From NCBI GenBank assembly GCA_051294905.1, contig CM119374.1, positions 19,654,001 to 19,718,000 of the forward strand: a stretch of 64,000 nucleotides of DNA, given 5' to 3'. The stretch's first letter is position 1, and each line of letters opens with the position of its first letter. The stretch comes from Botryllus schlosseri. Taxonomy: Eukaryota. The translations under genes were made by a program, and so were the position numbers. The notes beneath the pieces were generated by a model that was not told where the DNA came from, ran no database searches, and worked only from the letters and a program-made list of their open reading frames with translations. This document shows, one piece after another, positions 49,154 to 63,093 of this stretch.

Positions 49154-49908
49154 CTACGTTAATTTATAATAGTGCATATCGGGCTCTCCATCCGGTGCGT
49201 CGGATGCTATTCGCGTCATGTGCACGGTGCTGTTGTCGTAATATTGAAACCTTCGTTTCTTCCGAATTCGATAAACGATAGTTCCGATCACGCATATTAT
49301 TATGATCGCTGCTCCTATACATGCTATTATCCATATCAACATACTATTGTCCTTCTCCACACTGTCCGTGACTCCGTCTTCAAGCATTGGAGTGTTTTGA
49401 ACAGCTGTTGTGAGCTGGATCGTTCGTTTGGTTATCATCTCTGTGATTTGGCGCACTCGCGTGGCCGTGGATGATAGATCCATGTTGTCGGTTGCGCTCG
49501 CTATTCTTGGTTTAGGAGTGGGCATATCGGATTCCGCAGGATATCCGATAGTTGTCGATATCGACATAACGAGATACTGTTTTGATGTTCCCAATCGCGC
49601 GGTGTCGTCGGTATAGAGAGTTCGCGTTGGTTGTGAAACACCAAAAATTGTACCATTATCAATATTATTAGCATTCCATCTTGTGGAAACTGTTTCGTTG
49701 AACATAATCAATGCCTTTGTGGTGGACTTCGGCCTGTAGGATGACGTAGTTTCAGTCTGTGTCGTTTGCGCCTCTGTGGTAGACTGTGGCCTGTGGGATG
49801 AAGTGGTTTGAGTCTGTTTCGTTTGCGCCTCTGTTGTGAGTTGATTCGAGACTGCCGTGGATTGGTAGGTAGCGGTTGTTTTTGGAGGCGCCGCCCACGT
49901 AGGAGTGA
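49154..49908 (-). CDS. Terminal exon: Ser/Thr-rich stalk, transmembrane helix and 38-aa cytoplasmic tail
   Basis: Acceptor atttcattttag| in phase 1, within the longest ORF of the window. Thr/Ser-rich region, then hydrophobic MLIWIIACIGAAIIIICVIGTIVY (about 49342-49271), then basic RIRKKRR, ending ...DMHYYKLT*. Confidence 0.92.
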
Positions 49909-52900
49909 CTAAAATGAAATTGTGTGACATTATTGCAGTTAACTACTGCCAGGACATGCTAATACGAATTGAAGTAGTAGTAAAAAAGTTTGAAAATCTC
50001 TAGTTCAAAATTGTTTCTACGTGTCAGAATTTTTAAGAGGCAATATTGTGACTTCAAAAATGCAGACGTGGAAGTAATCTGAAGTTTGAACGCAGCGAAT
50101 GGCGCAAGTAGACAAACTTACTTTGAGTACTCCGAAAAATAGAAGTAGCCTACTCTGCTATTAACTGTTTCTGCTATTTTGTTACAGTGGGGATAATATT
50201 AGCATACATGGCTTACATAAACACGACGACCCCGTCTTCGAGTATTGAAGCTCATCCAGAACTATGTTTCCTGCTCTGCCTCTCTCCCAATCAAAACCCG
50301 CAAACATTAGTCGTCTGATTGTGGTTGGATTCGTAGGAGGCAATTCAACCTGTTAATGCAACAGCATATAGCCTACTTATACAACTTATATTTGTGACCT
50401 TGTTGTTATTATTATGTCATCAATATCATAAGCATGCATCCATGATATCTATACGACTTATATAGCCTATGCAATGAGTTTCCATTCTACAGTCATTAAA
50501 TATGTTGCAAATTAACGTATTTCTTGCCGAGCAGCTCCGCTAAAAGTACTATAGACTGCGATCACGCGGTCATCACTTCTCAGCTCACTCATCACGCACT
50601 CACAACCCACATACGTTGAGCAGTGACGTGATTGGTGAGGCACAGAGTCAGGGTTGTAAATGACTCGACTCGAGTCATCATCTTCTGATGACTCGACTTG
50701 GCTTGAGTCATTTTCGCAAAATTCAGAAATGAGTCGACTCGAGTCATTGCGCATGACTCGGACCAAGTCGTATGACTCGAAACTCAGACAGCCAAGACCG
50801 ACATTTTATCGCAATTTCGAAGAATAGTAAAGTTACCACACTATTGGGACTTCATCTATTGGTACTGGAACTTGAAAATGCGACAATAAACTGCTAAAAG
50901 TGAGGAAAATTAGTATATTATAAATGCGAACCATTCGATATCACCAAACAGAGGTATAAAAAGTGGGCATGGACAAGACTTTAACTGGTAACTGAGCAGT
51001 CAACACAATGACTTGGACTCGGACTCGAGTCATAATACCATGACTCGGACTCGACCCTCTGATATCTGACTTGGACTCGGACTTGACTCGGTGGTGAATT
51101 GGAAATGACTCGACTTGACTCGGGTCAAAACTATAAAATGAGATTGACTTGTGACTCGGAGACTTGTGACTTGATTACAACCCTGCACAGAGTACTGACC
51201 TCTGAGAGTCACCAGATTTACAAATATATAAACCCAAAAGGTTAGCTTATTTAATTGACTGCTTGTTATTTCATATATATTTTCCTTACACGCAGCAGGA
51301 TATACGTACGAAGGCAGCCTACTACGTTACATTTTCACAATTGAATGCAGGTCTGGAGAATACGTGTTGCTGTTCGTATTTGACTGCGGTCCGGCATAAG
51401 ATGGTTGTGTCACAGGGTGAAATAGGCAGCTTGTGCGACATTTGCATTTCTACATCGACAACGGCAAAAACTACCTTAAATTGTTTAGTAGCGATACAAG
51501 GGTGATCTTCATTGGAATTTGATCAAGTTGTCGCATTTTATGTGGCTCACATATCAATTGGGTCCTATATGTTTATTCACCGATTGTCTGTGTCCCATTT
51601 TCGTGAAATAATTCAACATATTAGATCTACTTGATATTTCTTTCTTAAAATAAATTGTGTCCAGGTTATAGAATCTGATAATTGGGATACATTTAACCAG
51701 GTGCTTCCAGCCTGAAACGACGATGTCGCCCATTTAAATGACTTAATAATGACCACAAGCAGTGGTTCCTAACGTTTACTAACCTGGGAATGGCTTACGT
51801 TAATCTGCAAGCCTTCGGGAACCCCAATTTTTCGCTGAGTCTAAAACAATCCAACGCAACACACATCTAACCACAAAATTAACTGTGTGGAGTATTACAA
51901 GAACAAAGCCAGTGCATTATGGTTTTCACACAAAACGAAAACATTAAAATAAATATTTAGTGCAAATTCTGCTGTTCCCTGTCGGATATCGGTTCGGAAA
52001 AGCGAGGCTTCACCTTGGGAAGTGTCATCATATTGTTTGGTCGAAACACAACAGCGTAATACCCAAAATTATTATTTTTAAATGTAAAAACAAGTTGAGA
52101 GATGCATATCACAGCAATGGTTATTTACGCCACCACTGTACTGTGTACAAGAGATGCTACCAATCGATTGATTTCTAACGATCTTATAAATATTGGATAT
52201 AGAAGCGGCATTTCAGTATGACGTGTTGTAAATTTCGAAACCCTATCTCCCCTGCTCACGCCACGGCTCATGATAAATACCACCGCTCTTGGGCAACAAA
52301 CGCGTGCATTGCAATTATTGTAATAAAGGTAAGAAATTATAAGGTATAATATTTTATACGAAAAAATGTCGTGGCACAAATCACGATAAGTGTTATCGTA
52401 CCGTACCAAACCATCGCAGTGCTCCTTAATAGTCAATACAACACGAGAAGAAAATTAAAACAAGGTGACAGCTTACCTGCCCTCTTTGCCATAGATTTCC
52501 TTGCTGGCCGTAAACCGCCCACACCAAGTTCGACAGATCATGTTTATAAACTGTCGAACTCGCATTGATTCTCGAATACAAGACGTCGAACAACTTTAAA
52601 TGCCCCATATGTCTTCCTGCGTTAACGGAAACATATATAGTTGAAAAGATGCAAGCAGGACCTTCACCACCGGGAGAAGTGGTCAGTAGGAAATAGGCCT
52701 ATACTTCTACTTTTCCAGAGTATTCACGTGGATTTTGTCTGGTTCCGCGCGATTTCTAACGTTATTAGACCACTTCCATGTCTACCTTCACAATTCTTGA
52801 AGCCAAACTACATGCCTTTTACAGTTTAGAATTTGCCGAGTATGCTGTATTAAGACATATTCGGATCACTGTCACGGTTGCAGTGACAACTGATGCAAAA

Positions 52901-55900
52901 TTGCCCCTTATTTTATCGCCATTAGTCGAAGTCTATAGTCGCAACGATGTAATCTTGGAAAACCCTCACCAATGGTTGACTAATAAATCTGCCTCGTCCC
53001 AATCTACTACTTCAGAGTACTTACTTAAGTAGTTCTCCAAATTTTCGCTTTGTTACTTCTACTTGAAAGTTTTGCCGTATCTTGGGAATCCTTTAATTAT
53101 ATGGGTAATTGAGTTACGGCATTATTTCAGTTCGAGTTTTGTGTGGCAATGCGGAATGCTTCATCATTTCTATACAAGGCTTACACATTTCTGTATTATG
53201 CCATGATATACACATTCAAGCAATCTTTAACTGTGACCGCAGACATTAAATATCGCATGTTTCTAATCCTAGGTCCAAATTAACAGATCATACTCTAAAA
53301 GTCTGAATTGCACATATGTGGGTTGGAATGAGCTTGTGGCCTATTTTAAGTGCCGAGTCCGAATGAGGCAAAGTAGTGACCAATCGTCATATCACTGGTC
53401 AACAAAATGAAAAAAATTAATAGGAATAAGATCTTCAGGGGTGTTTTCTGGGGTTTTACGGTTGCTATGATTACGAATATGACATTAGTTTTGCAAGATT
53501 GACTACAGTTTACAATTTGCAAATACCCCTAAAATAATCACTGTATTTACCCTCAAAATATTTTTCTTGGTACGCAGTAAGCCGTAGCTTTCTCTACCTT
53601 TATAATGTGCAGAAATAGATAATTGACTATGAAGAACTCTCAGTTACTTAATCATTAACTTGACCAGATGCTAGATCTTTGTTGTCTAAAGAGCATTCTG
53701 TCAAGCCTAACAATTTTAGCCTACTTTTGCACAACGGAAATATATTTTCTCCTGTAAAAAAAATTGGTTATTCTACCAAGATGGAAGAGGAGTAGGCCTA
53801 TAAAGCTATCAATTGTTTTCTTTGAAAATCTTAACAACAATACTCATATGCGTCTCGTCTGTATTGACTTTTAGATGAGCAATTTTCTGCTAAGTCAACG
53901 AAGTGGGTATACAAAGTATCCCTATCAAACGAGAAGCTTAAAGCTGGTGTCTTTAATGGACCTCACGTTCGAACACGGATGAAATATTCTAATTTCATAT
54001 GAGGAAAGGACCTCACTGCACGGAATTCTTTCAATGATGTAGTTAAAATAATTTTGGAAAATCACAAAGTACCCAACTACATTATAGTTATCCTGAAAAT
54101 TGGTAGCCTATCTGCATGTGGAAAACTTGAAGGAGCAGCAAACATGAGCATTAAAGTTCACTCCCTGTTGATAATCTTGGAGACAGAGTGACGAGCAAGG
54201 GGAAAGGTTCCACCAAGACATCATAACTACAAAAGAAAGATACTGGGTGGATGAGATGATTATATTATGGAAGCCTATTTCTGAAATCTTTCGAGAGACA
54301 GCCTAAATTGCTTACAAGCGAAAATCGTACAAAAACGATTTTGTTTTAAGATAAATTAATATATTATATTACAAGTGATTATTTTGAGTTTACAATAGGT
54401 GACTATTGACATTAAACTGATGAAGATGTAGGTGAACAGATAGAAAAGTAATACCTATTTCGAATTTTTTTGCAAGATGACTCGCGTATCTCACCACCAC
54501 CAGCGATGACTCACAGATATAACACAATTGGTTGTTGTTATTAGTCACTCCGACAGGCTTATGGGCCTACCCTACATGCAAAATATATCAATTAATGAAG
54601 TAGACCAGTGGTTCCTAACCTGGAGAACCAATACGCTAAGCAGCAAGCCATACCTCTCATATGATACATGAAGCTGAAGCAACCCGACTCAGACTGCTTG
54701 AGTGCCGGAGATACCAAAAATGCAGTGCGGTTTTCTCCTCTATCGGCAAGCATGTAGACGTATTTCCCTGTCGTAAGAACAGAATATAGGACATTGAAAT
54801 CTCAAACGACATCTCAAACGCCGCTGTCGGACCGAGATTTGAGTTTGCGAGATTCTGCAGAAGACTACTGACATTTCGCTGAAAAACCAGTTTCCGTACA
54901 GCTACTTTTTACTAACCGGCAACTATTTAATTATTAAAACAAAGTTACAGTCGGATTGTCCAAATTAAGTATGAAAAAGGAAAAAATTTTAAATCGGTGG
55001 AATTTGCTACGACATCAAACTAAGCGTTTGAATTACAGCATATATGCCGGTGTATACATGTAGGCCAAGGGTCGCCAACTCAAAACTGGTCGTTTCAAGT
55101 TTCGGAGAGGCCGCGACCGCATATGAATTCAATATCGAGGTAAAATAGGCCACATAGTTTAACAACCACGTTTCTAAAACTTTACGTCAGTAAAACAGCA
55201 TGGGCGACGGGCATATTTACCAGTCCACAAAAGGAATAATATTATATTTAAATTACCATCGCCAAAGCCGTATCAGCTAGTGAGGAATAGTGACGTTGGG
55301 CACAGGAGAATAGCTTATTTTGAACAACAACAGCAATATTTTTAAACTGAAATAAATTTCAGCATTTCTAAATGCTTTACTAATCGTTCTTCTGAAATCT
55401 CAAATCAGATCACGGGCAGTAAAATATGACCTCACGGGCCGCGTGTTAGTGACGTCTGACGAAGGCTATACTCAGGACTGTAACTGCCGCACCACAAACC
55501 CCCCAATAGGAGGGCGAGCTCGAAGGGGGCCCCAAATTATTTTGTGAATGAAATCTTCAACATAAATTATTTTTTGAAAATTCTTGCAACAACATTCACA
55601 TTTTTTTCGCGCAAGGCTTGATTCAATGTTGCCAAATATCTTGATTGTTGGGTACACTTCCCCCAGGAAAAAACACGCATGATTTATATAAATGGGCATT
55701 TCGGCGTCGGCCATTACCGCGCCACGACATAGGCCTACTAAGACATATGGAGCTTTAAGCCATGTAACATGCGATTCCGAGAAGTGTGCCAGGACGATCG
55801 GCAGCTAGAAAATCTTGGCCGAAAAGGACTGCCCATATGCTGACCAATAACTTCGCTATATGACTGGCGCCGAATGTTCCTGTTCTGGCAATCTGAACGT

Positions 55901-58545
55901 CACAAGACAAATACCAACCCGCAGAGAAAAATTATTTGCCAGTGATGAAATACCAAATTGAAATCTTGTGCGTCTTTTAATTTATAGCAATCTATATGCA
56001 ATTCCCGATATTATCGATCGATTCAATCATGAATTCTAGAAAATTTCCGCGCTTGGCGCGATTAAGCGATATTTACTGATTCACTATCACTAATGAGAAT
56101 AGCAAATCTAGCTCACAAAGTAGCGGTGAAGATGGCGGTCAGGGAAAGAATATGACCAACGTCTTGGGGGGTCTGACGAAGTGCTGCTTCGGCCCTGGCC
56201 ACACTATTGGTATGGGGAATTCAATATCACTTTATAATCGGCTCCTAACGTTCACCGGATCCAAATAATGTCACCGGAATAGGATGTATTTTAAAAATTT
56301 GCTCAAGTTAGGTCCTGGTTAGCGTTAGCTTGGATACGATTAGGTTGACGTTTGCTTGGACTAGTGTTCGGGTTAGCAACAGCTTGGATTTGGAAATGAC
56401 TATTTTACTCGTTTGAGTAACAAATAATTTGAGTGACATTGAAAAATTTCGTACCAATCGTTTGAGGGACAGAGAAGTTGTCTCGAGAAATGCATTTAAT
56501 ATGAATCAATCGAGTCCAACCCTAAACGTAACTATCGCTATAACCCTAATTATGAGAATTCTAGCCCAGGCCTGGTTCGCCGACGAGACTTCAATACAAA
56601 TATATAAATATTTCAATGTGAAATTCCTCCCTCGAACTCATCAAACTCCCGCTGCTGGAGGCCGACGTAAAGTATTCAGATTGGCATCAATTGTACGAAC
56701 ATATCCATGTTTTCACCCGATTATAAAACTGCCGTGGCGATTGATAGGTGGATGTAGCGGAATTTACGCACTAGCTTACCAGTTCGTGAACCCCTGGCAT
56801 CGCTCTTGACTCCTGTTTTTCCTCTTCTCCTCCATGACATTTTCGCAACGCCAAGCATCCAGCGGAAATCTGTATTTACGTTCACCCAACCGCACATGTC
56901 CCCACCATCGAAATTGCAACTCGCCGCACTCCACGGATCTACAGTTTAGGCAAAGTCAAAGTTTACCAATGGGCAACACCGAACCCTGTTTTGACAGCAA
57001 TCCAAGTCGTTATAGATGAAATCCTATTCGCATCGAGTCCGATCGGCTGTTTCGAATGTATCGAAACATATGTCTCAGACTGAATTAACAGAAGTGATTA
57101 CATCCCGGGCCCGGCTCTTCGTATTTTCTCACTAGGCAGAGCGGTATTGGATAACAGAGCACGTTAGCTGGTATATACGCCGAACAGGAGCTTTCGATAG
57201 TCGCAAACCCTGTCGTTTTAAAAATATTCCATGGCCTCTTATCGAAGTGCGCTCATAAAATAAAGATCGTTCTAAGTCTATGATGTAATAATCACATGTA
57301 AACACTTGTAAATGACATGTCGGGTATATGACCCCGGGAAGACTTGCTTATGCTGTACTGGTATCAAGTAATTTTATGATTGTTTTCTGCCCGTTACCAT
57401 TATCTCTATATCTGACCTATGATGTTCACTTGCGATAATTACGTCGCATCGAAAGAAATGTTCCAAGCTCACTAAGACACCGATATTTCTAGACAGATAA
57501 CTGAAATTTCATTTCAACTTTTTTTAATATATAAAAAACGCTGCTCACCAATTTTGATCCAATTCCAGCCTATGGAAGCATTGATATATAAGAAAAAAGT
57601 ATTGGATTAATTAAATAAAAATAAATGTAAGAATCTTTCAAATTTTACTGATTACCCCGCGAAATTGTTAACACGATATACAGCAAATTTGGCTCCATTA
57701 CAACCCATAAAAGCGAAGTTATTGGTGTTCAGAATTTAGGATTTTTAATCATATTATTTACGCTAGGTAGATTTATAGTCACTAATTCTATAATTTGCCA
57801 TCGTAAATACTATTTTTTTGAAATCCCAAATTTTGTACTTCAATAACTTCGTTTCAACTGGTTGGAATTGAGTCAAATTTGTTGAAGGCTACATCGTGTC
57901 ATCAGACAACCTAACAGTTCCATGGGATAACCAGTACAATCTGTTAGCTGCACAGACATTTGCCGTTCTCACTGATCTTATATGAAGTGTACTTGATTCA
58001 ATTTTGAAATTTTCGCGAATTCAGTATTTCTAATTCTAATCTAATCTGGAAAAACTGTGTAGATATCATTCTAATTCTAATGTAATCGGGAAATAACGGT
58101 ATATCTATAATTCTAATTCTAGGCTATTTGGGAATAAAAATGTGTAGATATCATTCTAATTCCAATGTAATTGGGCAATAACTGTATATCTATAATTCTA
58201 ATTCTAGTCCATCTTGGAAAAAACTGTGTAGCTATAATTCTAATTCTATGCTGAAATTTTTCTTAGGTTTCCAACTCTGCATTCAGACTCCGTATCCAGG
58301 CGGTGCAGGACTCAAGTCAATACCAAAAGTGCCTGCCAAATAGTACGCACCGTTTCCTTCGCACGTTTCACGACATTCCGACATCGTCACGAAATTGTTA
58401 TCGTTGCCACCGCAGCCTCCGTACACAAACGATTTGCATTGATTTTCAGCGGCGTCGAAATAAAAACTTACAAAACTGCCTCTGCAACCGCCGCTTTCTT
58501 TCGGAGCGTGGCAACGTTGCGTTCCCGTCGAATGGGGGCTGTCGG
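49154..58545 (-). CDS. 5'-partial spliced gene: Kunitz/BPTI + MAM + mucin-like stalk + TM + short Tyr-containing tail (type I membrane protein). Exons 58545-58351, 56938-56780, 54767-54654, 52616-52477, 50349-50217, 49908-49154
   Basis: Manually assembled. All introns are GT..AG. Phases chain as 1-1-1-1-0-1 with no stop until TAG at 49156-49154. Exon lengths are 195, 159, 114, 140, 133 and 755 nt. Domain motifs are listed under the individual exons. Confidence 0.9.
49719..49832 (-). repeat. Coding tandem repeat, 2 x 57 bp (19 aa) in the mucin-like stalk
   Basis: TTEAQTKQTQTTSSHRPQS / TTEAQTTQTETTSSYRPKS. The units are 49776-49832 and 49719-49775. Confidence 0.85.
50217..50349 (-). CDS. Exon: MAM domain part 4
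   Basis: Acceptor gttgcattaacag|, donor t|gtaagc, phase 0-1. VELPPTNPTTIRRLMFAGFDWERGRAGNIVLDELQYSKTGSSCL corresponds to the MAM end (F.G...G.I.lD.l...C). Confidence 0.87.
50649..51185. mobile_element. 537-bp intronic hAT-like MITE with GACTC/GAGTC subterminal arrays
   Basis: Perfect 11-bp TIR CAGGGTTGTAA. Perfect 8-bp TSD cacagagt. About 20 GACTC/GAGTC pentamers, roughly 10 per end. Confidence 0.92.
51967..52063 (-). repeat. Second copy of the 7391-7486 repeat (intronic)
   Basis: TTCTGCTGTTCCC...GCGAGGCTTCACCTTG...GTGTCATC.TA..GTTTGGTCGAA...AACAGCGT.ATACC is shared between the two copies. Confidence 0.8.
52477..52616 (-). CDS. Exon: MAM domain part 3
   Basis: Acceptor gtttccgttaacgcag|, donor cag|gtaagc, phase 1-0. 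GRHMGHLKLFDVLYSRINASSTVYKHDLSNLVWAVYGQQGNLWQRGQ contains the MAM G.L...W...GQQG..W motif. Confidence 0.9.
53393..54340 (+). pseudogene. Internally deleted, decayed DNA transposon (probable CMC-Chapaev3-like transposase remnant) in an intron
   Basis: Plus-strand fragments NFLLSQRSGYTKYP (53881-53922), EKLKAGVFNGPHVR (about 53931-53972) and SDEQGERFHQDI (54187-54222) match motifs of a widespread transposase. A CACTGGTC terminus-like start lies at 53393. The superfamily name is recalled and unverified, and the right end is unresolved. Confidence 0.75.
54654..54767 (-). CDS. Exon: MAM domain part 2
   Basis: Acceptor ttctgttcttacgacag|, donor g|gtatgg, phase 1-1. GKYVYMLADRGENRTAFLVSPALKQSESGCFSFMYHMR matches MAM G.Y.Y....A.L.SP....C.SF.YHM.G. 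Confidence 0.9.
55473..56197 (+). mobile_element. Old 725-bp CAGGGCCG-family non-autonomous element (intronic)
   Basis: Left end is homologous to 45613. Right end is CGGCCCTG. Flanking 8-mers gctatact / gccacact match at 6/8. Confidence 0.6.
56780..56938 (-). CDS. Exon: MAM domain part 1
   Basis: Acceptor ctttgcctaaactgtag|, donor g|gtaagc, phase 1-1. DPWSAASCNFDGGDMCGWVNVNTDFRWMLGVAKMSWRRRGKTGVKSDARGSRT matches the MAM start C-x-F-D/E...C-G-W...W...TG..D. Confidence 0.88.
58029..58250. repeat. Minisatellite of five ~41-43-bp units in A-B-A-B-A order (intron between the Kunitz and MAM exons)
   Basis: Units start with TTCTAATTC. A units carry AA(C/A)TGTGTAG. B units read AATGTAAT.GGG.AATAAC.GTATATCTATAA. 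Confidence 0.88.
58351..58545 (-). CDS. Exon: BPTI/Kunitz domain
   Basis: Acceptor tattttcag|, donor g|gtgcgt, phase 1-1. CHAPKESGGCRGSFVSFYFDAAENQCKSFVYGGCGGNDNNFVTMSEC..TC has the canonical C-x8-C-x15-C-x7-C-x12-C-x3-C spacing and the FxYGGCxGNxNNF motif. Confidence 0.93.
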
Positions 58546-58814
58546 CTGAAAATATAGGCAGCATGTCACAGAAAGACGCTGTAACAAATTAAATTTTGGC
58601 ATTGAAATGCCCAGAAAGGGAAAAAATGATGCCGTGATATTCTCACTAATGATAAGTAACTCAGGATATTCTTGGAGGCACAGAACTTCAACATACAATT
58701 GGATAATATATTCATATTGAAATGAACCCAAAAATCTACTTGAGTACTCCTAAATGTATAAGTACATCGCTATCGACCCCCTCCGCGTAAAAAGTGACTA
58801 CGGTTTCAGACTTC

Positions 58815-59000
58815 TACTAGTACTTGACAGTTTCAATAATTTGATAAAACTTGGACTAAAATACATCAATCACCTACTTGGATATCTATCCTTGAGTCGA
58901 TCAAGTAAATCAGATTTTTCAATACTTCCACTTGTATACTGGACCATATTTTGTGAAGTAATTACTTTCCACTATATTTGAAGTCTGTCAAGTAGCAGTA
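58815..59000. mobile_element. Possible old ~185-bp MITE
   Basis: Inverted repeat with perfect core TACTTGACAG (58821-58830) / CTGTCAAGTA (58985-58994) and imperfect flanks. No TSD verified. Confidence 0.35.
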
Positions 59001-59080
59001 TACGTTACGGTGACCTCATTTTCTGTACGTCGAGCTCGCGCTGTTTGATCATCTTGACTAACGATATTCGTTGGGCTACT

Positions 59081-60305
59081 CAGTGGTTCTCAACCTTTTT
59101 GACCGCGCGGCACCCATTGGAGATGAAAAATAGTTCGCGGCATACCATCTGAACTTTTTTGGCTTACGGCATCTGTAAACTACCAGAATACTTATTAGTA
59201 CCCAGTAGTAACGCTTACTAATGTGACCTCCTCTGCAGTCAATCAAAAAATGTCTCTGTACTTCCTTTCTTTTGAAATAAACTTCTCAATTTTAATATTT
59301 TTATAAGTAAACTTTTGTACGTAAAGCGTCCCTAGCTTACGAAGCCGGGATAGAATGTCGTCGTTTTCCTCGGGCCAGAATATCGTTCCTTCGTGATTAC
59401 AACAAATAGTACGTATTCAGACGAAAGTGAAAGTGGTCATTTTGATATACGACTCCACAGAAACTTTAAGCAGCCCTTATTTAGATACTATTTCATAAGA
59501 TTTGTTTGACAATAAATCTGCCCACTGCCGCATTGGGTCGAAGAGGTCAAGCACGATCGCCGCTAAGGAATACGGAGGCATAGTGGTGTAGGCTATACCA
59601 GGCTATACAATGCATTTCCACGCAGATCGTGCAGCACGCATAAGGATACGATAGCCATTCCTCAATAGCTCTACTGGCACTCACCCGCAGTTCAATTATA
59701 CTTCCAACAAACCAAGCTTATAACCTCAGCGGCGAAGAGGTTTGTTGAATGATAAAATTTTGTCTACCTCAGCACTTCTCAATTCTCATATTCGTCGACA
59801 GTAACACAACGTTGTGCTACAAGCCTATCTTTTAACGGAACTTCCGGCACGATACCTAACAATCGCAATGTGGATTGTCATGTTTGTAATTCGAATTTGT
59901 AAACGCGAACGTCAATTCCAAAGCAGTTCCCTTCTCGCTGGTGATTGGGGAGACGATGAGGATTATAAAACTGCATTGTCAATGTCATACAGGCGTCGCC
60001 ATGTCTGCTCTTCTCGGTGATCAATCGAAATAGTGTGGAAAACTGAATGCAGCCTTCAAGGCACGCGGTATGTCCGGTAAAGCGAATTCGAGGGGGCTAT
60101 TGATTACGTTTACGGGCATAGCATGAATTTATAATTGTCAAATGTACAAACTTCACATCAAGCTCGATTTAAATTATTGATCGTTTGCTATAGACTAGAA
60201 TTATTTTGCGCATAATTTCAAAATTCCGAACAAATCGCTCGCGGCACACTCTCGAAACGTAAATGACACACTAGTGTGCCGCGGCACACCGGTTGAGAAC
60301 CACTG
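59081..60305. mobile_element. 1225-bp Charlie-type hAT non-autonomous element
   Basis: Perfect 15-bp TIR CAGTGGTTCTCAACC. GCGGCAC subterminal motifs. TSD ggctac-t / ggctacat differs by a 1-nt indel. Confidence 0.85.
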
Positions 60306-60390
60306 GGCTACATCATGAGTAGAGCCCGACCGATATTGGATTCCTGAGCCGATACCGATAAGACCGATATCCAGTACCTGCACCGATAAC

Positions 60391-61612
60391 CAGGGCTTTG
60401 GAGCCGGAGCCGGAGCCCGGAGCCGGAGCCCCGGAGCCATGCATTTTCACCGGAGCTGGAGCCGGAGCCGGAGCTCTACATAAAATTCAGCCGGAGCCGG
60501 AGCCGGAGCTGGAGCTCGTTGTTTGAGGAGTAGCTCCGGCTCCGACCTATTTCATAAGATGCTATTATATATGCAACAACCACATCTGCTGATTTATCAT
60601 AATTGAATAGCAGGCCTGAATTTTAATGCTGTGCACAGCAATGGCATATAGTAAAGTGCGTTCTACTGCAACTATGATGTTGTCGACAATTGACAAGTAT
60701 TCAGCATGAAGTCACAAGCCGGCACGGCGGCACCTATATGTCTTCGTTGCTACATCGGATGTTACTGACGCCTGAAAGACTCTAGATTACTATGGGTAGA
60801 TTAGTAATCTATATAGACCAGGAATGGTCAAACTCTTCGGCTAAAGGGGCAAATGCAATTGACGAACGAGTGCGCGGTCCACTAGCCGCGCCAAGCGGGT
60901 AAGATTTTCTAAGTTTATAAATAAACTAGGTGAGTATTGCGGGTCTATTGTATACCACCCGCTAGGCTCAGTTTGCAAGGACACGACTATTCGGCGTCGG
61001 GACACATCGATATCGAAGGTCTCCGAAAATATGCGACAATCATATGTTGCCTCCATTTCACCGTCGACGATTTTTATCCGAGCGCAAACGCGAAAAGACT
61101 TTCTCCCGTAATTGCGAATACAGTTAAACTCAATCGGGTAAATTAGGCGTTTTTTTCATTTTCAGTAGGGGGTAGGCTACCAACCAAGAAATCGTGTGAC
61201 AATTAAACACGCGAAGCGTGAAGAAGAATTTCGCTACTATTTTAGTTTATTGTAATATACGACGATTTACGGAAAATGTGACTGGACCCTGGATCTGCCA
61301 CTGCGTCGGAACTGATATTTTAGTCATCAACATCCCAAGTGTCGCAGCAAGAATTGTAATTTTTGTTTGGCATTGCAAGTTCACAATCTGAGCAATGCAT
61401 TTTCGATAATATAATTGGAAATTACCTCGCGGGCCACGCAAAACCCTCTCGCGACAGGACCATTTGATAATTTCAGAGCCGGAGCCGGAGCTGGAGCCGG
61501 AGCAGTGGTAATAATGCGGCTCCGGAGCTGGAGCCGGAGCTAATGTATGATAGAAGAGAGCTCCGGAGCCGGAGCTGGAGCAGTTTAAATTTACGGCTGC
61601 TCCAAAGCCCTG
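60391..61612. mobile_element. 1222-bp hAT-like element with (GGAGCC)n subterminal arrays, nested in 60320-62820
   Basis: Perfect 14-bp TIR CAGGGCTTTGGAGC. Perfect 8-bp TSD ccgataac (60383-60390 and 61613-61620). Confidence 0.93.
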
Positions 61613-61792
61613 CCGATAACCCCGATATATTCAGCCGATATTCAAAATATATGGAATCTAGCTCAAGGCCCATATTTAACACCTAAGAGCATTTATTTCA
61701 ACAACTTTACAGCCATTGATATGCTAGATTATGAAATACATGATCTAGGAGCTATAAAAAGATATCAAAAGCACCAATCCAGCAGTTGCAGA

Positions 61793-61990
61793 TTACAGTT
61801 CACGAAGCACAATTTCTTGGCCCTTTCTCCAAGGAGTCAACTTTTGTGGTCTTCCATAAATGATGTATATAGTACTAAACACAGTGAGCAGTCTTTCACT
61901 CGGTACCATAGTTAGTGGCACAGCAAGAATTGGAAATCTTTCTTCATTTCGATTCCACCGCTCCCTTGGAGGGGATCTTTCCCTCAATGG
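61793..61990 (-). pseudogene. Decayed hAT transposase C-terminal dimerization-domain fragment
   Basis: RWNRNEERFPILA...VPSERL..FS.....RPQKLTP resembles the hAT dimerization consensus WW...rfP.La...p.ts..sER.FS...R.rL.p. Confidence 0.7.
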
Positions 61991-63093
61991 TTTCACCAAA
62001 TATTAATATTGATATTCTTCCGGCAGTGTACCTGGAGCCTTCAGCACATCATTAACAAATAACTAAAGAGAATGTGCAAAGCAGCTGAAATTGTCCACGT
62101 CTGCAACTGCTCCACCCATCCCCCTCGGGCCTTGACCATGACCAGCATTTCAACAATCAATTGATCAATATTTTACGCTCGTTTGTCAGAATTGGCCAAT
62201 GTCATCGTGGAATCCAAAATTTTCGTATCAATTATTGGCTTTATTCCACGTTTGCTTGATTTTCTTGCCCTCTGTGCTCGCATATTTCCTATCATGGTGG
62301 CCCCGCAGGCCTCAGTCAGACGACTTCATATATTACTGGTATAATTAGCTCTGTTGGTACCGAACCAATAGCCCCATCTTCCCAGAAATGTTTCGACGCG
62401 ACGCTTTTCTCTATCATCACGAGGGTCAGTCCAGCATGATTGAAGTTCTCATTTCTCTTACTGATTGAAATCTTCAGCAGAAAACTATCAATCCACCTGC
62501 TCTCTGACTTTAGTGATCGATTACTGCTGGAGGATTCCCACGAAGTCAGTGGGGCATAACGGTGGTTAGTTATCTAATATTTTTTCAGATAGGCACGCCT
62601 ACTGCCTGTATGCAGTATGCACTATATGCAGCTTGGCCATTTATTTTTATAATTTACCGCCCTCACGTCTTCTATCGACTTCTCCGACTCCCTGCCACCA
62701 TGTTGTGACGTCACGAAAATGGCCGATATTTTTTTACCTTCAATGGCCGATACCGATATTTCTCTCCAAGCGTGATATCGACTCGATATTATCGGCGAGC
62801 CGATAATCGGTCGGGCTCTAATCATGAGTGATAGCCTCGAAACTTGGAACAGTGTTAGATGACGTTATCCAGATATGTCATGCGAAATCCTGTATCGTGA
62901 CTCGGTATAGAACATCATTAAAATCAACACAAACCATACCGACTTATAAGTAAATTATGTTATGTGGTTGGCTCCATTTCAGATCCCACTCGCCGTATCG
63001 ATATATCAATTACACTCAAGTGGTTACGATTTTAGATTATACTCCTTTTCGTTTTAGAGAGAACTCATCTTAAAATACTATCTGATTACTTAC

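What the first reader, a model, noticed from the sequence alone, without database searches (positions are those of the whole stretch)
49154..58545. Type I membrane protein with an unusual Kunitz-MAM-mucin-TM architecture
Seen: six phase-compatible exons encode an intact Kunitz domain directly followed by a four-cysteine MAM domain, a mucin-like stalk, one TM helix and a short tail. The ORF track shows only pieces of it and misses most of the MAM domain. Established: membrane Kunitz proteins (HAI-1/SPINT1, HAI-2/SPINT2, APP family) and membrane MAM proteins (meprins, RPTP mu/kappa, neuropilins, ALK, zonadhesin, MDGA) do not, to my knowledge, pair these two domains in this way. Inference: a cell-surface protease inhibitor raised on a stalk and joined to an adhesion/dimerisation module, possibly a protease-sensing receptor. 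Novelty is unverified.
Basis: partly seen in the sequence, partly recalled or inferred. Interest (0 to 1): 0.72.

Follow-up and report, generated by a model that had tools for sequence, protein, structure and literature searches.

The report
Sea-squirt MAM receptor captured Kunitz exon
A sea-squirt gene for a conserved cell-surface protein has picked up a copied protease-inhibitor (Kunitz) exon from a gene on another chromosome and really splices it into its mRNA, a clean natural case of exon shuffling that probably makes a membrane-tethered protease inhibitor.

Summary
Six minus-strand exons (58545-49154), all GT..AG and phase-compatible, encode a canonical six-cysteine Kunitz domain (Pfam 3e-19), a four-cysteine MAM domain, a 190-residue Ser/Thr-rich stalk, one TM helix and a 38-residue tail. 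Assembled RNA contigs from three public runs join the Kunitz exon to the first MAM exon at exactly the predicted sites.

The model is 5'-incomplete. The Kunitz exon starts in phase 1, and I could not place a start codon or signal-peptide exon.

The MAM-stalk-TM-tail body belongs to an uncharacterised ascidian gene family (Styela clava LOC120328929, Ciona savignyi H2ZKN6). These relatives share its intron positions but have no Kunitz domain; in them the signal-peptide exon splices straight to the MAM exon across a phase-1 intron.

The Kunitz exon and about 240 bp of flanking intron are a copy (91% identical in the exon, 76-81% in the flanks) of one exon of a multi-Kunitz matrix-type locus on another chromosome.

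The architecture is therefore a lineage-specific exon-shuffling product. Its reactive loop (Cys-Arg-Gly-Ser-Phe) matches HAI-1 Kunitz domain 1, so a membrane-tethered trypsin-type inhibitor is the likeliest function, but this is inferred. The scan holds no other note on this gene.

The parts
58351..58545 (-). Kunitz exon, 195 nt, phase 1-1. Cys1-Cys6 lie at 58513-58361 and the P1 Arg codon at 58483-58481.
   Evidence: Pfam PF00014 E 3.2e-19. Splice sites. Joint to 56938 seen in three runs. Reactive loop C-R-G-S-F aligned to HAI-1 KD1.
56780..56938 (-). MAM exon 1, carrying Cys1 and Cys2. Phase 1-1.
   Evidence: Pfam MAM positions 1-31, E 0.01. Aligned to the Styela, Ciona and L005 orthologues. 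RNA contigs cover 56779-56938.
54654..54767 (-). MAM exon 2, carrying Cys3. Phase 1-1.
   Evidence: Pfam MAM positions 45-82, E 8e-5. Colinear with the relative's mRNA contig L004.
52477..52616 (-). MAM exon 3. Enters in phase 1 and ends in phase 0.
   Evidence: Aligned to P0003, P0001 and L005. Junction position is shared with the Styela gene.
50217..50349 (-). MAM exon 4, carrying Cys4 at 50223-50221. Enters in phase 0 and ends in phase 1.
   Evidence: Conserved FDW..G.AGNIVLD block aligned to the orthologues.
49154..49908 (-). Last exon. Ser/Thr-rich stalk (50220-49343, starting in the previous exon), TM helix 49342-49271, cytoplasmic tail 49270-49157 and stop codon 49156-49154. Tail motifs: YYDNSTVHMTR at 49243-49211 and C-terminal YYKL at 49171-49160.
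   Evidence: Composition and coordinates. Tail homology to P0001-P0004 and to Ciona savignyi P0008.
58309..58739 (-). The 431-bp segment (Kunitz exon plus flanking intron) that is duplicated from, or shared with, G000:C9:26136981-26137419.
   Evidence: blastn gives 82.9% identity over 439 columns. The exon is 91.3% identical without gaps; the flanks are 76-81% identical with gaps. Whole-genome hit.
58728..58945 (.). Terminal fragment of a high-copy transposon. It abuts the upstream edge of the duplicated segment and lies in the intron 5' of the Kunitz exon.
   Evidence: 1761 first-look candidates genome-wide, many as inverted pairs 2.4-3.5 kb apart. RNA reads show loose ends at 58728/58729.

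Best explanation
This is a single-copy, transcribed gene of a stolidobranch (probably colonial) ascidian. It encodes a type I surface glycoprotein with these parts in order: an N-terminal exon not yet located, a Kunitz domain, a 10-residue linker, a MAM domain, an O-glycan-type stalk, a TM helix and a 38-aa tail.

The MAM-stalk-TM-tail body is an old ascidian gene. The Kunitz exon is a symmetric phase 1-1 exon. It was copied at the DNA level, with about 240 bp of intron, from a multi-Kunitz matrix-type locus on contig C9 into the phase-1 intron that follows the signal-peptide exon, so it is read in frame.

Likely working (inferred): the Kunitz domain sits at the membrane-distal tip and has a canonical P1-Arg loop. 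It binds and blocks trypsin-like serine proteases at the cell surface. The MAM domain supplies lateral oligomerisation or ligand contact. The conserved C-terminal Tyr-x-Lys-Leu motif drives endocytic sorting, so bound protease could be removed from the surface.

Shown: the exon structure, the domains, the Kunitz-to-MAM splice, the orthologues without Kunitz, and the paralogous donor exon. Inferred: signal peptide and topology, protease inhibition, oligomerisation and endocytosis.
For: Exons, phases and the spliced ORF.

Kunitz 69.3 bits with canonical cysteine spacing. MAM.

RNA: the joint 56938|58351 occurs in X1, X2 and X3. X3 record 17 (748 nt) carries window-specific bases at all 13 positions it covers (of 17 in the exon) that distinguish this Kunitz exon from its C9 paralogue. 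That contig passes the junction without a break. These runs give zero depth over the unique intron stretch 57100-57499, so what they hold is spliced RNA. They hold 0.09-0.12 of the stretch's words, against an exon share of 0.16.

The gene is single copy.

Orthologues without Kunitz: Styela clava P0003, which has no Kunitz match in its introns or in 10 kb upstream and whose intron 1 is phase 1; and Ciona savignyi P0008, which is full length. The Ciona intestinalis entry P0006 is an N-terminally truncated MAM fragment and cannot show presence or absence. A relative's mRNA contig, L004, is colinear with the spliced model from MAM exon 2 to the stop codon.

Donor: C9:26137183-26137377 is 91% identical over exactly the 195-nt exon, and homology extends 42 nt downstream and 194 nt upstream. 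The C9 locus carries five Kunitz exons.

The reactive loop C-R-G-S-F is identical to that of HAI-1 Kunitz domain 1, which is among the top PDB hits.

The tail motif is conserved from Ciona to this species.
Against: No start codon or signal-peptide exon was found, so the N-terminus and topology are inferred from orthologues.

dN/dS between the two Kunitz copies is 0.6, from 12 non-synonymous and 5 synonymous changes. The exon's 8.7% divergence, against 23% in the flanks, could arise from constraint on the donor copy alone. Selection on this copy is therefore not shown.

A bulk RNA-seq run (X10) had no reads on the MAM exon 1 and almost none on the Kunitz exon, so expression is low or restricted.

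No biochemical evidence exists for inhibition, oligomerisation or endocytosis.

A Kunitz-skipping isoform (also in frame) cannot be excluded.
Confidence: 0.6

Rival explanations
1. Young, effectively neutral chimera. The Kunitz exon landed in the intron by chance and is spliced in because it brought good splice sites and keeps the frame. It adds no selected function, and the protein works as its Kunitz-less orthologues do.
For: dN/dS is 0.6 on only 17 differences. Exon-versus-flank conservation can be explained by constraint on the donor copy alone. All full-length orthologues seen lack the domain. Expression is low.
Against: All six cysteines, the P1 Arg, the FVYGGCGGN core and both splice sites are intact. 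Kunitz inclusion is the assembled path in three runs, with no graph break at the junction. The flanks have diverged about 20-24%, so the copy is not brand new and yet remains intact.
Confidence: 0.25
2. The Kunitz domain acts as a non-inhibitory binding module, as in the collagen VI alpha3 C5 domain or the channel-binding toxins. It gives the MAM receptor a new ligand rather than protease control.
For: The donor locus looks like a matrix protein (collagen, VWC and several Kunitz exons), and matrix Kunitz domains are often poor inhibitors (established knowledge). Collagen VI alpha3 Kunitz is among the PDB hits.
Against: The P1 Arg, P1' Gly and the full C-R-G-S-F loop equal the active HAI-1 KD1 loop. 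Nothing in the sequence suggests loss of the canonical loop.
Confidence: 0.1
3. Artefact: the Kunitz exon and the MAM exons belong to different genes, or the RNA join is an assembly chimera with the C9 paralogue's transcripts.
For: A 91%-identical, more highly expressed paralogous exon exists (depth 66). One contig (X2 record 9) stops matching after 88 nt of the Kunitz exon and may be chimeric.
Against: X3 record 17 and X1 record 2 carry only window-specific bases at 13 and 8 discriminating positions respectively, and both cross the exact GT..AG junction. Three runs from two studies agree.
Confidence: 0.03

Closest known systems
Ascidian MAM-stalk-TM family (Styela clava LOC120328929 'uncharacterized protein'; Ciona savignyi H2ZKN6; Ciona intestinalis H2Y1P3 fragment)
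   Same: One MAM domain with the same four exons and intron positions and phases. A Pro-Ser/Thr-x-Ala-Ala-Pro-Pro motif after the last MAM cysteine. A Ser/Thr-rich stalk, a TM helix, and a tail with YYDNxTVHMTR (stolidobranchs) and a C-terminal Tyr-x-Lys-Leu/Phe. 34% identity over 427 aa to the Styela protein.
   Different: In the full-length relatives (Styela clava, Ciona savignyi) the signal-peptide exon joins the MAM exon directly. Only the window gene has a Kunitz exon between them.
HAI-1/SPINT1 and HAI-2/SPINT2 (membrane-anchored Kunitz inhibitors of matriptase, hepsin and HGFA)
   Same: A type I membrane protein that presents a Kunitz domain with P1 Arg. The reactive loop Cys-Arg-Gly-Ser-Phe is identical to HAI-1 KD1.
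   Different: Here there is one Kunitz domain, not two. There is no MANSC, internal/PKD-like or LDLa domain. MAM and mucin stalk take their place. The origin is independent, by exon capture within ascidians.
APP/APLP2 KPI isoforms
   Same: A single Kunitz domain, encoded by one symmetric exon, inserted into the ectodomain of a type I membrane protein. Because the exon is symmetric it could be optional.
   Different: The rest of the protein is unrelated. Alternative use of the exon is not shown here.
Membrane-proximal MAM proteins (neuropilin-1/2, MDGA1, RPTP mu/kappa; insect SR-C-like)
   Same: These are the best solved-structure matches of the family's MAM profile, with E from 5e-20 to 2e-8 over the whole domain.
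   Different: None of them carries a Kunitz domain. Their other domains (CUB, F5/8C, Ig, FN3, phosphatase) are absent here.
Donor locus G000:C9:26.122-26.140 Mb (collagen repeats, a MAM-containing 431-aa open frame, VWC, five Kunitz exons)
   Same: Its third clear Kunitz exon (fourth of the five Kunitz-type exons) is 91% identical in DNA and 83% in protein to the window's exon, with the same 195-nt length and homologous intron flanks.
   Different: It is a secreted matrix-type array on another chromosome. Whether all of these exons form one gene was not tested.

Membership tests
Kunitz/BPTI (Pfam PF00014, MEROPS I2) | Profile match above the curated cut-off over the whole domain | tested here: met
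   69.3 bits against a cut-off of 21, model positions 1-53 of 53.
Kunitz/BPTI (Pfam PF00014, MEROPS I2) | Six cysteines spaced C-8-C-15-C-7-C-12-C-3-C | tested here: met
   Cysteines at residues 11, 20, 36, 44, 57 and 61 of the spliced product.
Kunitz/BPTI (Pfam PF00014, MEROPS I2) | Canonical inhibitory loop with a basic P1 and a small P1' | tested here: met
   P1 Arg and P1' Gly. The loop CRGSF aligns to HAI-1 KD1.
Kunitz/BPTI (Pfam PF00014, MEROPS I2) | Actual protease inhibition | not testable with these tools
   Needs a biochemical assay.
MAM domain (Pfam PF00629) | Profile match over about 160 residues | tested here: met
   Single exons score 16.2 and 23 bits, below the cut-off. The spliced domain aligns to a Pfam-positive MAM (P0003, 80.5 bits) at E 3e-57. 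The family profile hits solved MAM domains at up to 5e-20. The spliced sequence itself could not be submitted to Pfam.
MAM domain (Pfam PF00629) | Four conserved cysteines | tested here: met
   Cys 72, 80, 147 and 245, aligned with those of P0003, P0006 and P0008.
Ascidian MAM-stalk-TM family (Styela LOC120328929 type) | Same exon-intron layout, MAM, stalk, TM and conserved tail motifs | tested here: met
   Intron positions and phases match. Tail and post-MAM motifs are conserved. The only copy in this genome.
Ascidian MAM-stalk-TM family (Styela LOC120328929 type) | Signal peptide directly before the MAM domain | tested here: not met
   A Kunitz exon precedes the MAM exon. The signal-peptide exon was not located.
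HAI-1/HAI-2 (SPINT1/2) | Two Kunitz domains, plus MANSC and LDLa in HAI-1, on a type I anchor | tested here: not met
   Only one Kunitz domain. No LDLa or MANSC hit on any exon. The gene works like them at most; it is not a member.
Type I membrane protein | Cleavable N-terminal signal peptide plus one TM helix with a positive-inside flank | tested here: inconclusive
   TM helix followed by RIRKKRR is present. The signal peptide is unresolved. Three candidates were found: 67209-67089 beyond the window, in unique DNA; 65951-65840 beyond the window, overlapping a repeat; and a short one inside the window at 59658-59622. None is verified.

The most novel reading that the evidence does not exclude
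A recently assembled 'protease trap' receptor. By capturing one Kunitz exon, a conserved endocytic MAM surface protein was converted into a receptor that binds active trypsin-like proteases at the cell surface and internalises them through its conserved Tyr-x-Lys-Leu tail. In a colonial ascidian this could regulate the protease cascades of tunic, vasculature or allorecognition. It would be an HAI-1-like solution that evolved independently and recently, with donor and recipient genes both still identifiable.
Probability: 0.2. Interest if true: 0.65.

Novelty: new variant of a known kind. Interest (0 to 1): 0.45.

Why it matters
Exon shuffling is usually inferred from old, eroded cases. Here every element of the classic model can be seen in one genome and in its RNA:

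- the donor exon, in a multi-Kunitz locus on another chromosome;
- the recipient gene, with orthologues that lack the exon;
- the matching intron phase (a 1-1 exon placed in a phase-1 intron);
- the copied intron flanks;
- the spliced chimeric mRNA.

The case also gives a second, independent way of building a membrane-anchored Kunitz inhibitor, which is testable in a laboratory ascidian. It draws attention to an uncharacterised ascidian surface-protein family with a strongly conserved cytoplasmic tail. Both domains are known 'hub' domains that recombine freely in deuterostomes (PMC2394772), so the pairing itself is not a great surprise.

Tried and rejected
1. Signal-peptide exon. I scanned the minus strand from 56939 to 20 kb beyond the window for an ATG, a hydrophobic core and a phase-1 GT donor.
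- Two candidates lie beyond the window. One, at extended coordinates 67209-67089 (L002:3089-3209), is in unique DNA. The other, at 65951-65840, overlaps a repeat.
- A short candidate lies inside the window at 59658-59622.
- Neither candidate beyond the window resembles the Styela exon 1 (the short in-window one was not compared), and none could be checked with reads.

2. The 1938-nt contig X2 record 9 seemed to offer about 900 nt of mRNA upstream of the Kunitz exon. It stops matching exactly where the C9 paralogue starts to differ, so it may be a chimera. I did not use it.

3. Synteny with the Styela locus. tblastx of both 10-kb flanks against the window plus 20 kb found nothing.

4. The window's own protein is absent from both protein libraries, so no annotated model could be used. 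The spliced protein could not be submitted by reference, so Pfam, structure prediction and complex prediction were not run on the joined sequence.

5. Search for any Kunitz+MAM protein.
- The family-profile searches returned only Kunitz-less relatives.
- 100 nearest named Atlas clusters of the Styela homologue show no Kunitz partner.
- Literature searches gave no description.
- These searches are word-limited and length-limited, so this is a weak negative.

6. Continuation of donor homology beyond the transposon fragment upstream: none found.

7. Rfam on the whole window: no hit.
Full report
**What is there.** The window is animal DNA of about 40% GC. It lies at C4:19654001-19718000 of a 495.5-Mb assembly. 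On the minus strand, six open segments carry AG acceptors and GT donors with compatible phases:
- 58545-58351, phase 1-1
- 56938-56780, phase 1-1
- 54767-54654, phase 1-1
- 52616-52477, phase 1-0
- 50349-50217, phase 0-1
- 49908-49154, ending at a stop codon

The spliced product is 497 aa.

**Domains.**
- Exon 1 is a full Kunitz domain. Pfam gives 69.3 bits, E 3.2e-19, over model positions 1-53 of 53. The cysteine spacing is the canonical C-8-C-15-C-7-C-12-C-3-C.
- Exons 2-5 together make one MAM domain with four cysteines. On their own the exons score weakly or not at all.
- The joined domain aligns to a Pfam-positive MAM protein of Styela clava at E 3e-57.
- A family profile that contains the window's exons matches solved MAM domains over their whole length: SR-C-like 5e-20, MDGA1 7e-19, neuropilin-1 1e-17, then RPTP kappa and mu, enteropeptidase and meprin.
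- The last exon gives a 190-aa stalk (32% Ser+Thr), a 24-aa TM helix followed by RIRKKRR, and a 38-aa tail.

**RNA evidence.** Runs X1-X3 hold 0.09-0.12 of the stretch's words, while the exons make up 0.16 of the stretch. Laid on 56700-62699, contigs from all three runs (two studies) skip 56938|58351 with CT..AC ends on the plus strand, which is GT..AG for this gene. The unique part of that intron (57100-57499) has zero depth in these runs, so they hold spliced RNA and not DNA.

There is a complication. A more abundant set of contigs covers the Kunitz exon with 9-19 mismatches. Those mismatches fall exactly at the positions where a paralogous exon on contig C9 differs, so those contigs come from the paralogue.
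- X3 record 17 (748 nt) carries the window's own base at all 13 discriminating positions it covers. It runs from the Kunitz exon into MAM exon 1 without a break and leaves the genome at that exon's donor site.
- X1 record 2 does the same over 8 discriminating positions.

The join therefore belongs to this gene, and in these runs it is the assembled main path.

The remaining junctions are supported in three ways. A relative's mRNA contig (L004) is colinear with the model from MAM exon 2 to the stop codon. The intron positions are identical in the annotated Styela gene. The length of X3 record 17 fits the spliced model.

Bulk run X10 showed essentially no reads on the two exons that lie in the laid stretch, so expression is low or restricted.

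**What is missing.** The Kunitz exon begins in phase 1 and has no usable start codon, so at least one 5' exon is needed. Simple scans found no convincing signal-peptide exon between the Kunitz and MAM exons, or within the window upstream.

The DNA upstream is packed with repeats. A transposon terminal fragment lies at 58728-58945, with at least 1761 candidate copies. A young family lies at 61700-62500, with copies up to 98% identical.

Beyond the window there are two candidates:
- 67209-67089 in extended coordinates (L002:3089-3209). It lies in unique DNA and has a strong donor and an Ala-x-Ala-type cleavage site.
- 65951-65840, which overlaps a repeat.

Neither could be verified. The signal peptide and the type I topology therefore rest on the orthologues.

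**Relatives.** An exhaustive HMMER scan with the last exon found only four relatives. Word-based searches added others.
- Styela clava LOC120328929 (434 aa) and Ciona savignyi H2ZKN6 (339 aa) are full length. Each has a signal peptide, then MAM, stalk, TM helix and tail. Neither has a Kunitz domain.
- The Ciona intestinalis entry (171 aa) is a MAM fragment.
- In the Styela locus, the signal-peptide exon ends in phase 1 and joins the MAM exon directly. No Kunitz-like sequence exists in its introns or in 10 kb upstream.
- Shared features include a Pro-Ser/Thr-x-Ala-Ala-Pro-Pro motif after the last MAM cysteine. The tail has YYDNxTVHMTR in stolidobranchs and a C-terminal Tyr-x-Lys-Leu/Phe followed by one or two residues in all species, Ciona included.
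- The family is single copy in this genome.
- A Branchiostoma belcheri MAM-MAM-EGF-mucin-TM protein is a more distant relative, without the tail.
- The Styela and Ciona affinities fit earlier notes of this scan that call the genome a stolidobranch, colonial ascidian.

**Origin of the Kunitz exon.** A whole-genome DNA search finds one close copy, C9:26137183-26137377. It is 91% identical over exactly the 195-nt exon and 83% identical in protein.
- Homology continues 42 nt downstream and 194 nt upstream into the introns at 76-81% identity with gaps, then stops.
- The upstream limit abuts the transposon fragment.
- The exon is significantly better conserved than its flanks: 17 differences in 195 positions against 57 in 245, Fisher p = 6e-5.
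- The C9 locus carries, on one strand, collagen repeats, a 431-aa open frame with a MAM domain, a VWC domain and five Kunitz exons.

The multi-Kunitz C9 locus is therefore the likely donor and the window gene the recipient. A symmetric 1-1 exon dropped into a phase-1 intron stays in frame, as the classical exon-shuffling model requires.

dN/dS between the two copies is 0.6, from 12 non-synonymous and 5 synonymous changes. This value, and the exon-versus-flank contrast, could both reflect constraint on the donor copy alone. Selection on the captured copy is therefore not demonstrated.

**Likely function (inference).** The reactive loop is Cys-Arg-Gly-Ser-Phe, with P1 Arg and P1' Gly. It is identical to Kunitz domain 1 of HAI-1, the domain that inhibits matriptase-type proteases. 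The secondary loop FVYGGCGGN is canonical. Only ten residues separate the last Kunitz cysteine from the first MAM cysteine.

The simplest reading is a membrane-tethered inhibitor of trypsin-like serine proteases held away from the membrane by a glycosylated stalk. MAM domains mediate oligomerisation or adhesion in meprins and RPTPs (established knowledge). The conserved C-terminal Tyr-x-x-hydrophobic motif is of the AP-2 endocytic or lysosomal sorting type (established knowledge). The tail contains no signalling domain, so 'sensing' is unsupported.

The main rival is that the exon is a tolerated passenger in a young chimera.

**Novelty.**
- No protein combining Kunitz and MAM appeared among the family's relatives.
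- None appeared among 100 nearest named Atlas clusters of the Styela homologue.
- None appeared in the literature searches.
- These are limited searches.

I rate the finding a new variant of a known kind, namely a membrane-anchored Kunitz inhibitor built on an ascidian-specific MAM receptor. Its main value is as an unusually complete, RNA-supported example of exon shuffling.

Noticed in passing
G000:C9:26122738-26139674 (loci L009-L011): On one strand within about 17 kb lie collagen triple-helix exons, a 431-aa open frame ending in a MAM domain (Pfam 3.7e-9), a VWC domain and five Kunitz exons. If these form one gene, it is an unusual collagen-MAM-VWC-multi-Kunitz matrix protein, and MAM and Kunitz would then co-occur in the donor too. 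Its Kunitz exon is transcribed at higher depth than the window gene.
   Followed up: partly
window 58728-58945: A terminal fragment of a very abundant element, with at least 1761 candidate copies, many as inverted pairs 2.4-3.5 kb apart, which suggests a DNA transposon with terminal inverted repeats. It ends within about 10 nt of the upstream limit of the duplicated Kunitz segment. Whether it played a part in the capture or inserted later is unknown.
   Followed up: partly
window 61700-62500: A young, high-copy repeat, with at least 435 candidate copies and full-length copies up to 98% identical. It is strongly transcribed on both strands in bulk RNA-seq run X10 (depth about 70). It has no Rfam match and looks like an active transposon family.
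   Followed up: partly
window 60300-61650: Hexanucleotide-type simple repeats that read as (Ala-Pro)n, (Ser-Gly)n or (Leu-Arg)n in different frames. RNA depth is very high and many spurious joints occur there. Reads are unreliable in this stretch.
   Followed up: no
L001:9983-10003 (Styela clava locus): In the Styela orthologue a long T-run followed by 'gtag' lies 17 nt before the start codon. It looks like a spliced-leader trans-splice acceptor. The window gene's missing first exon may start in the same way.
   Followed up: no
P0010 (Logan contig of SRR25569784, 1940 nt): A 72-aa open frame about 88% identical to the window's MAM exon 1, reading on into the intron. It probably comes from a close relative or a divergent haplotype. 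No DNA could be fetched, so whether it has the Kunitz exon is unknown. The same sample also yields P0004, a more distant family member.
   Followed up: partly
G000:C9:5.76-5.98 Mb: About 220 kb with dozens of MAM-domain exons on one strand, which dominate the genome-wide MAM hits. This is a giant multi-MAM gene or gene cluster.
   Followed up: no
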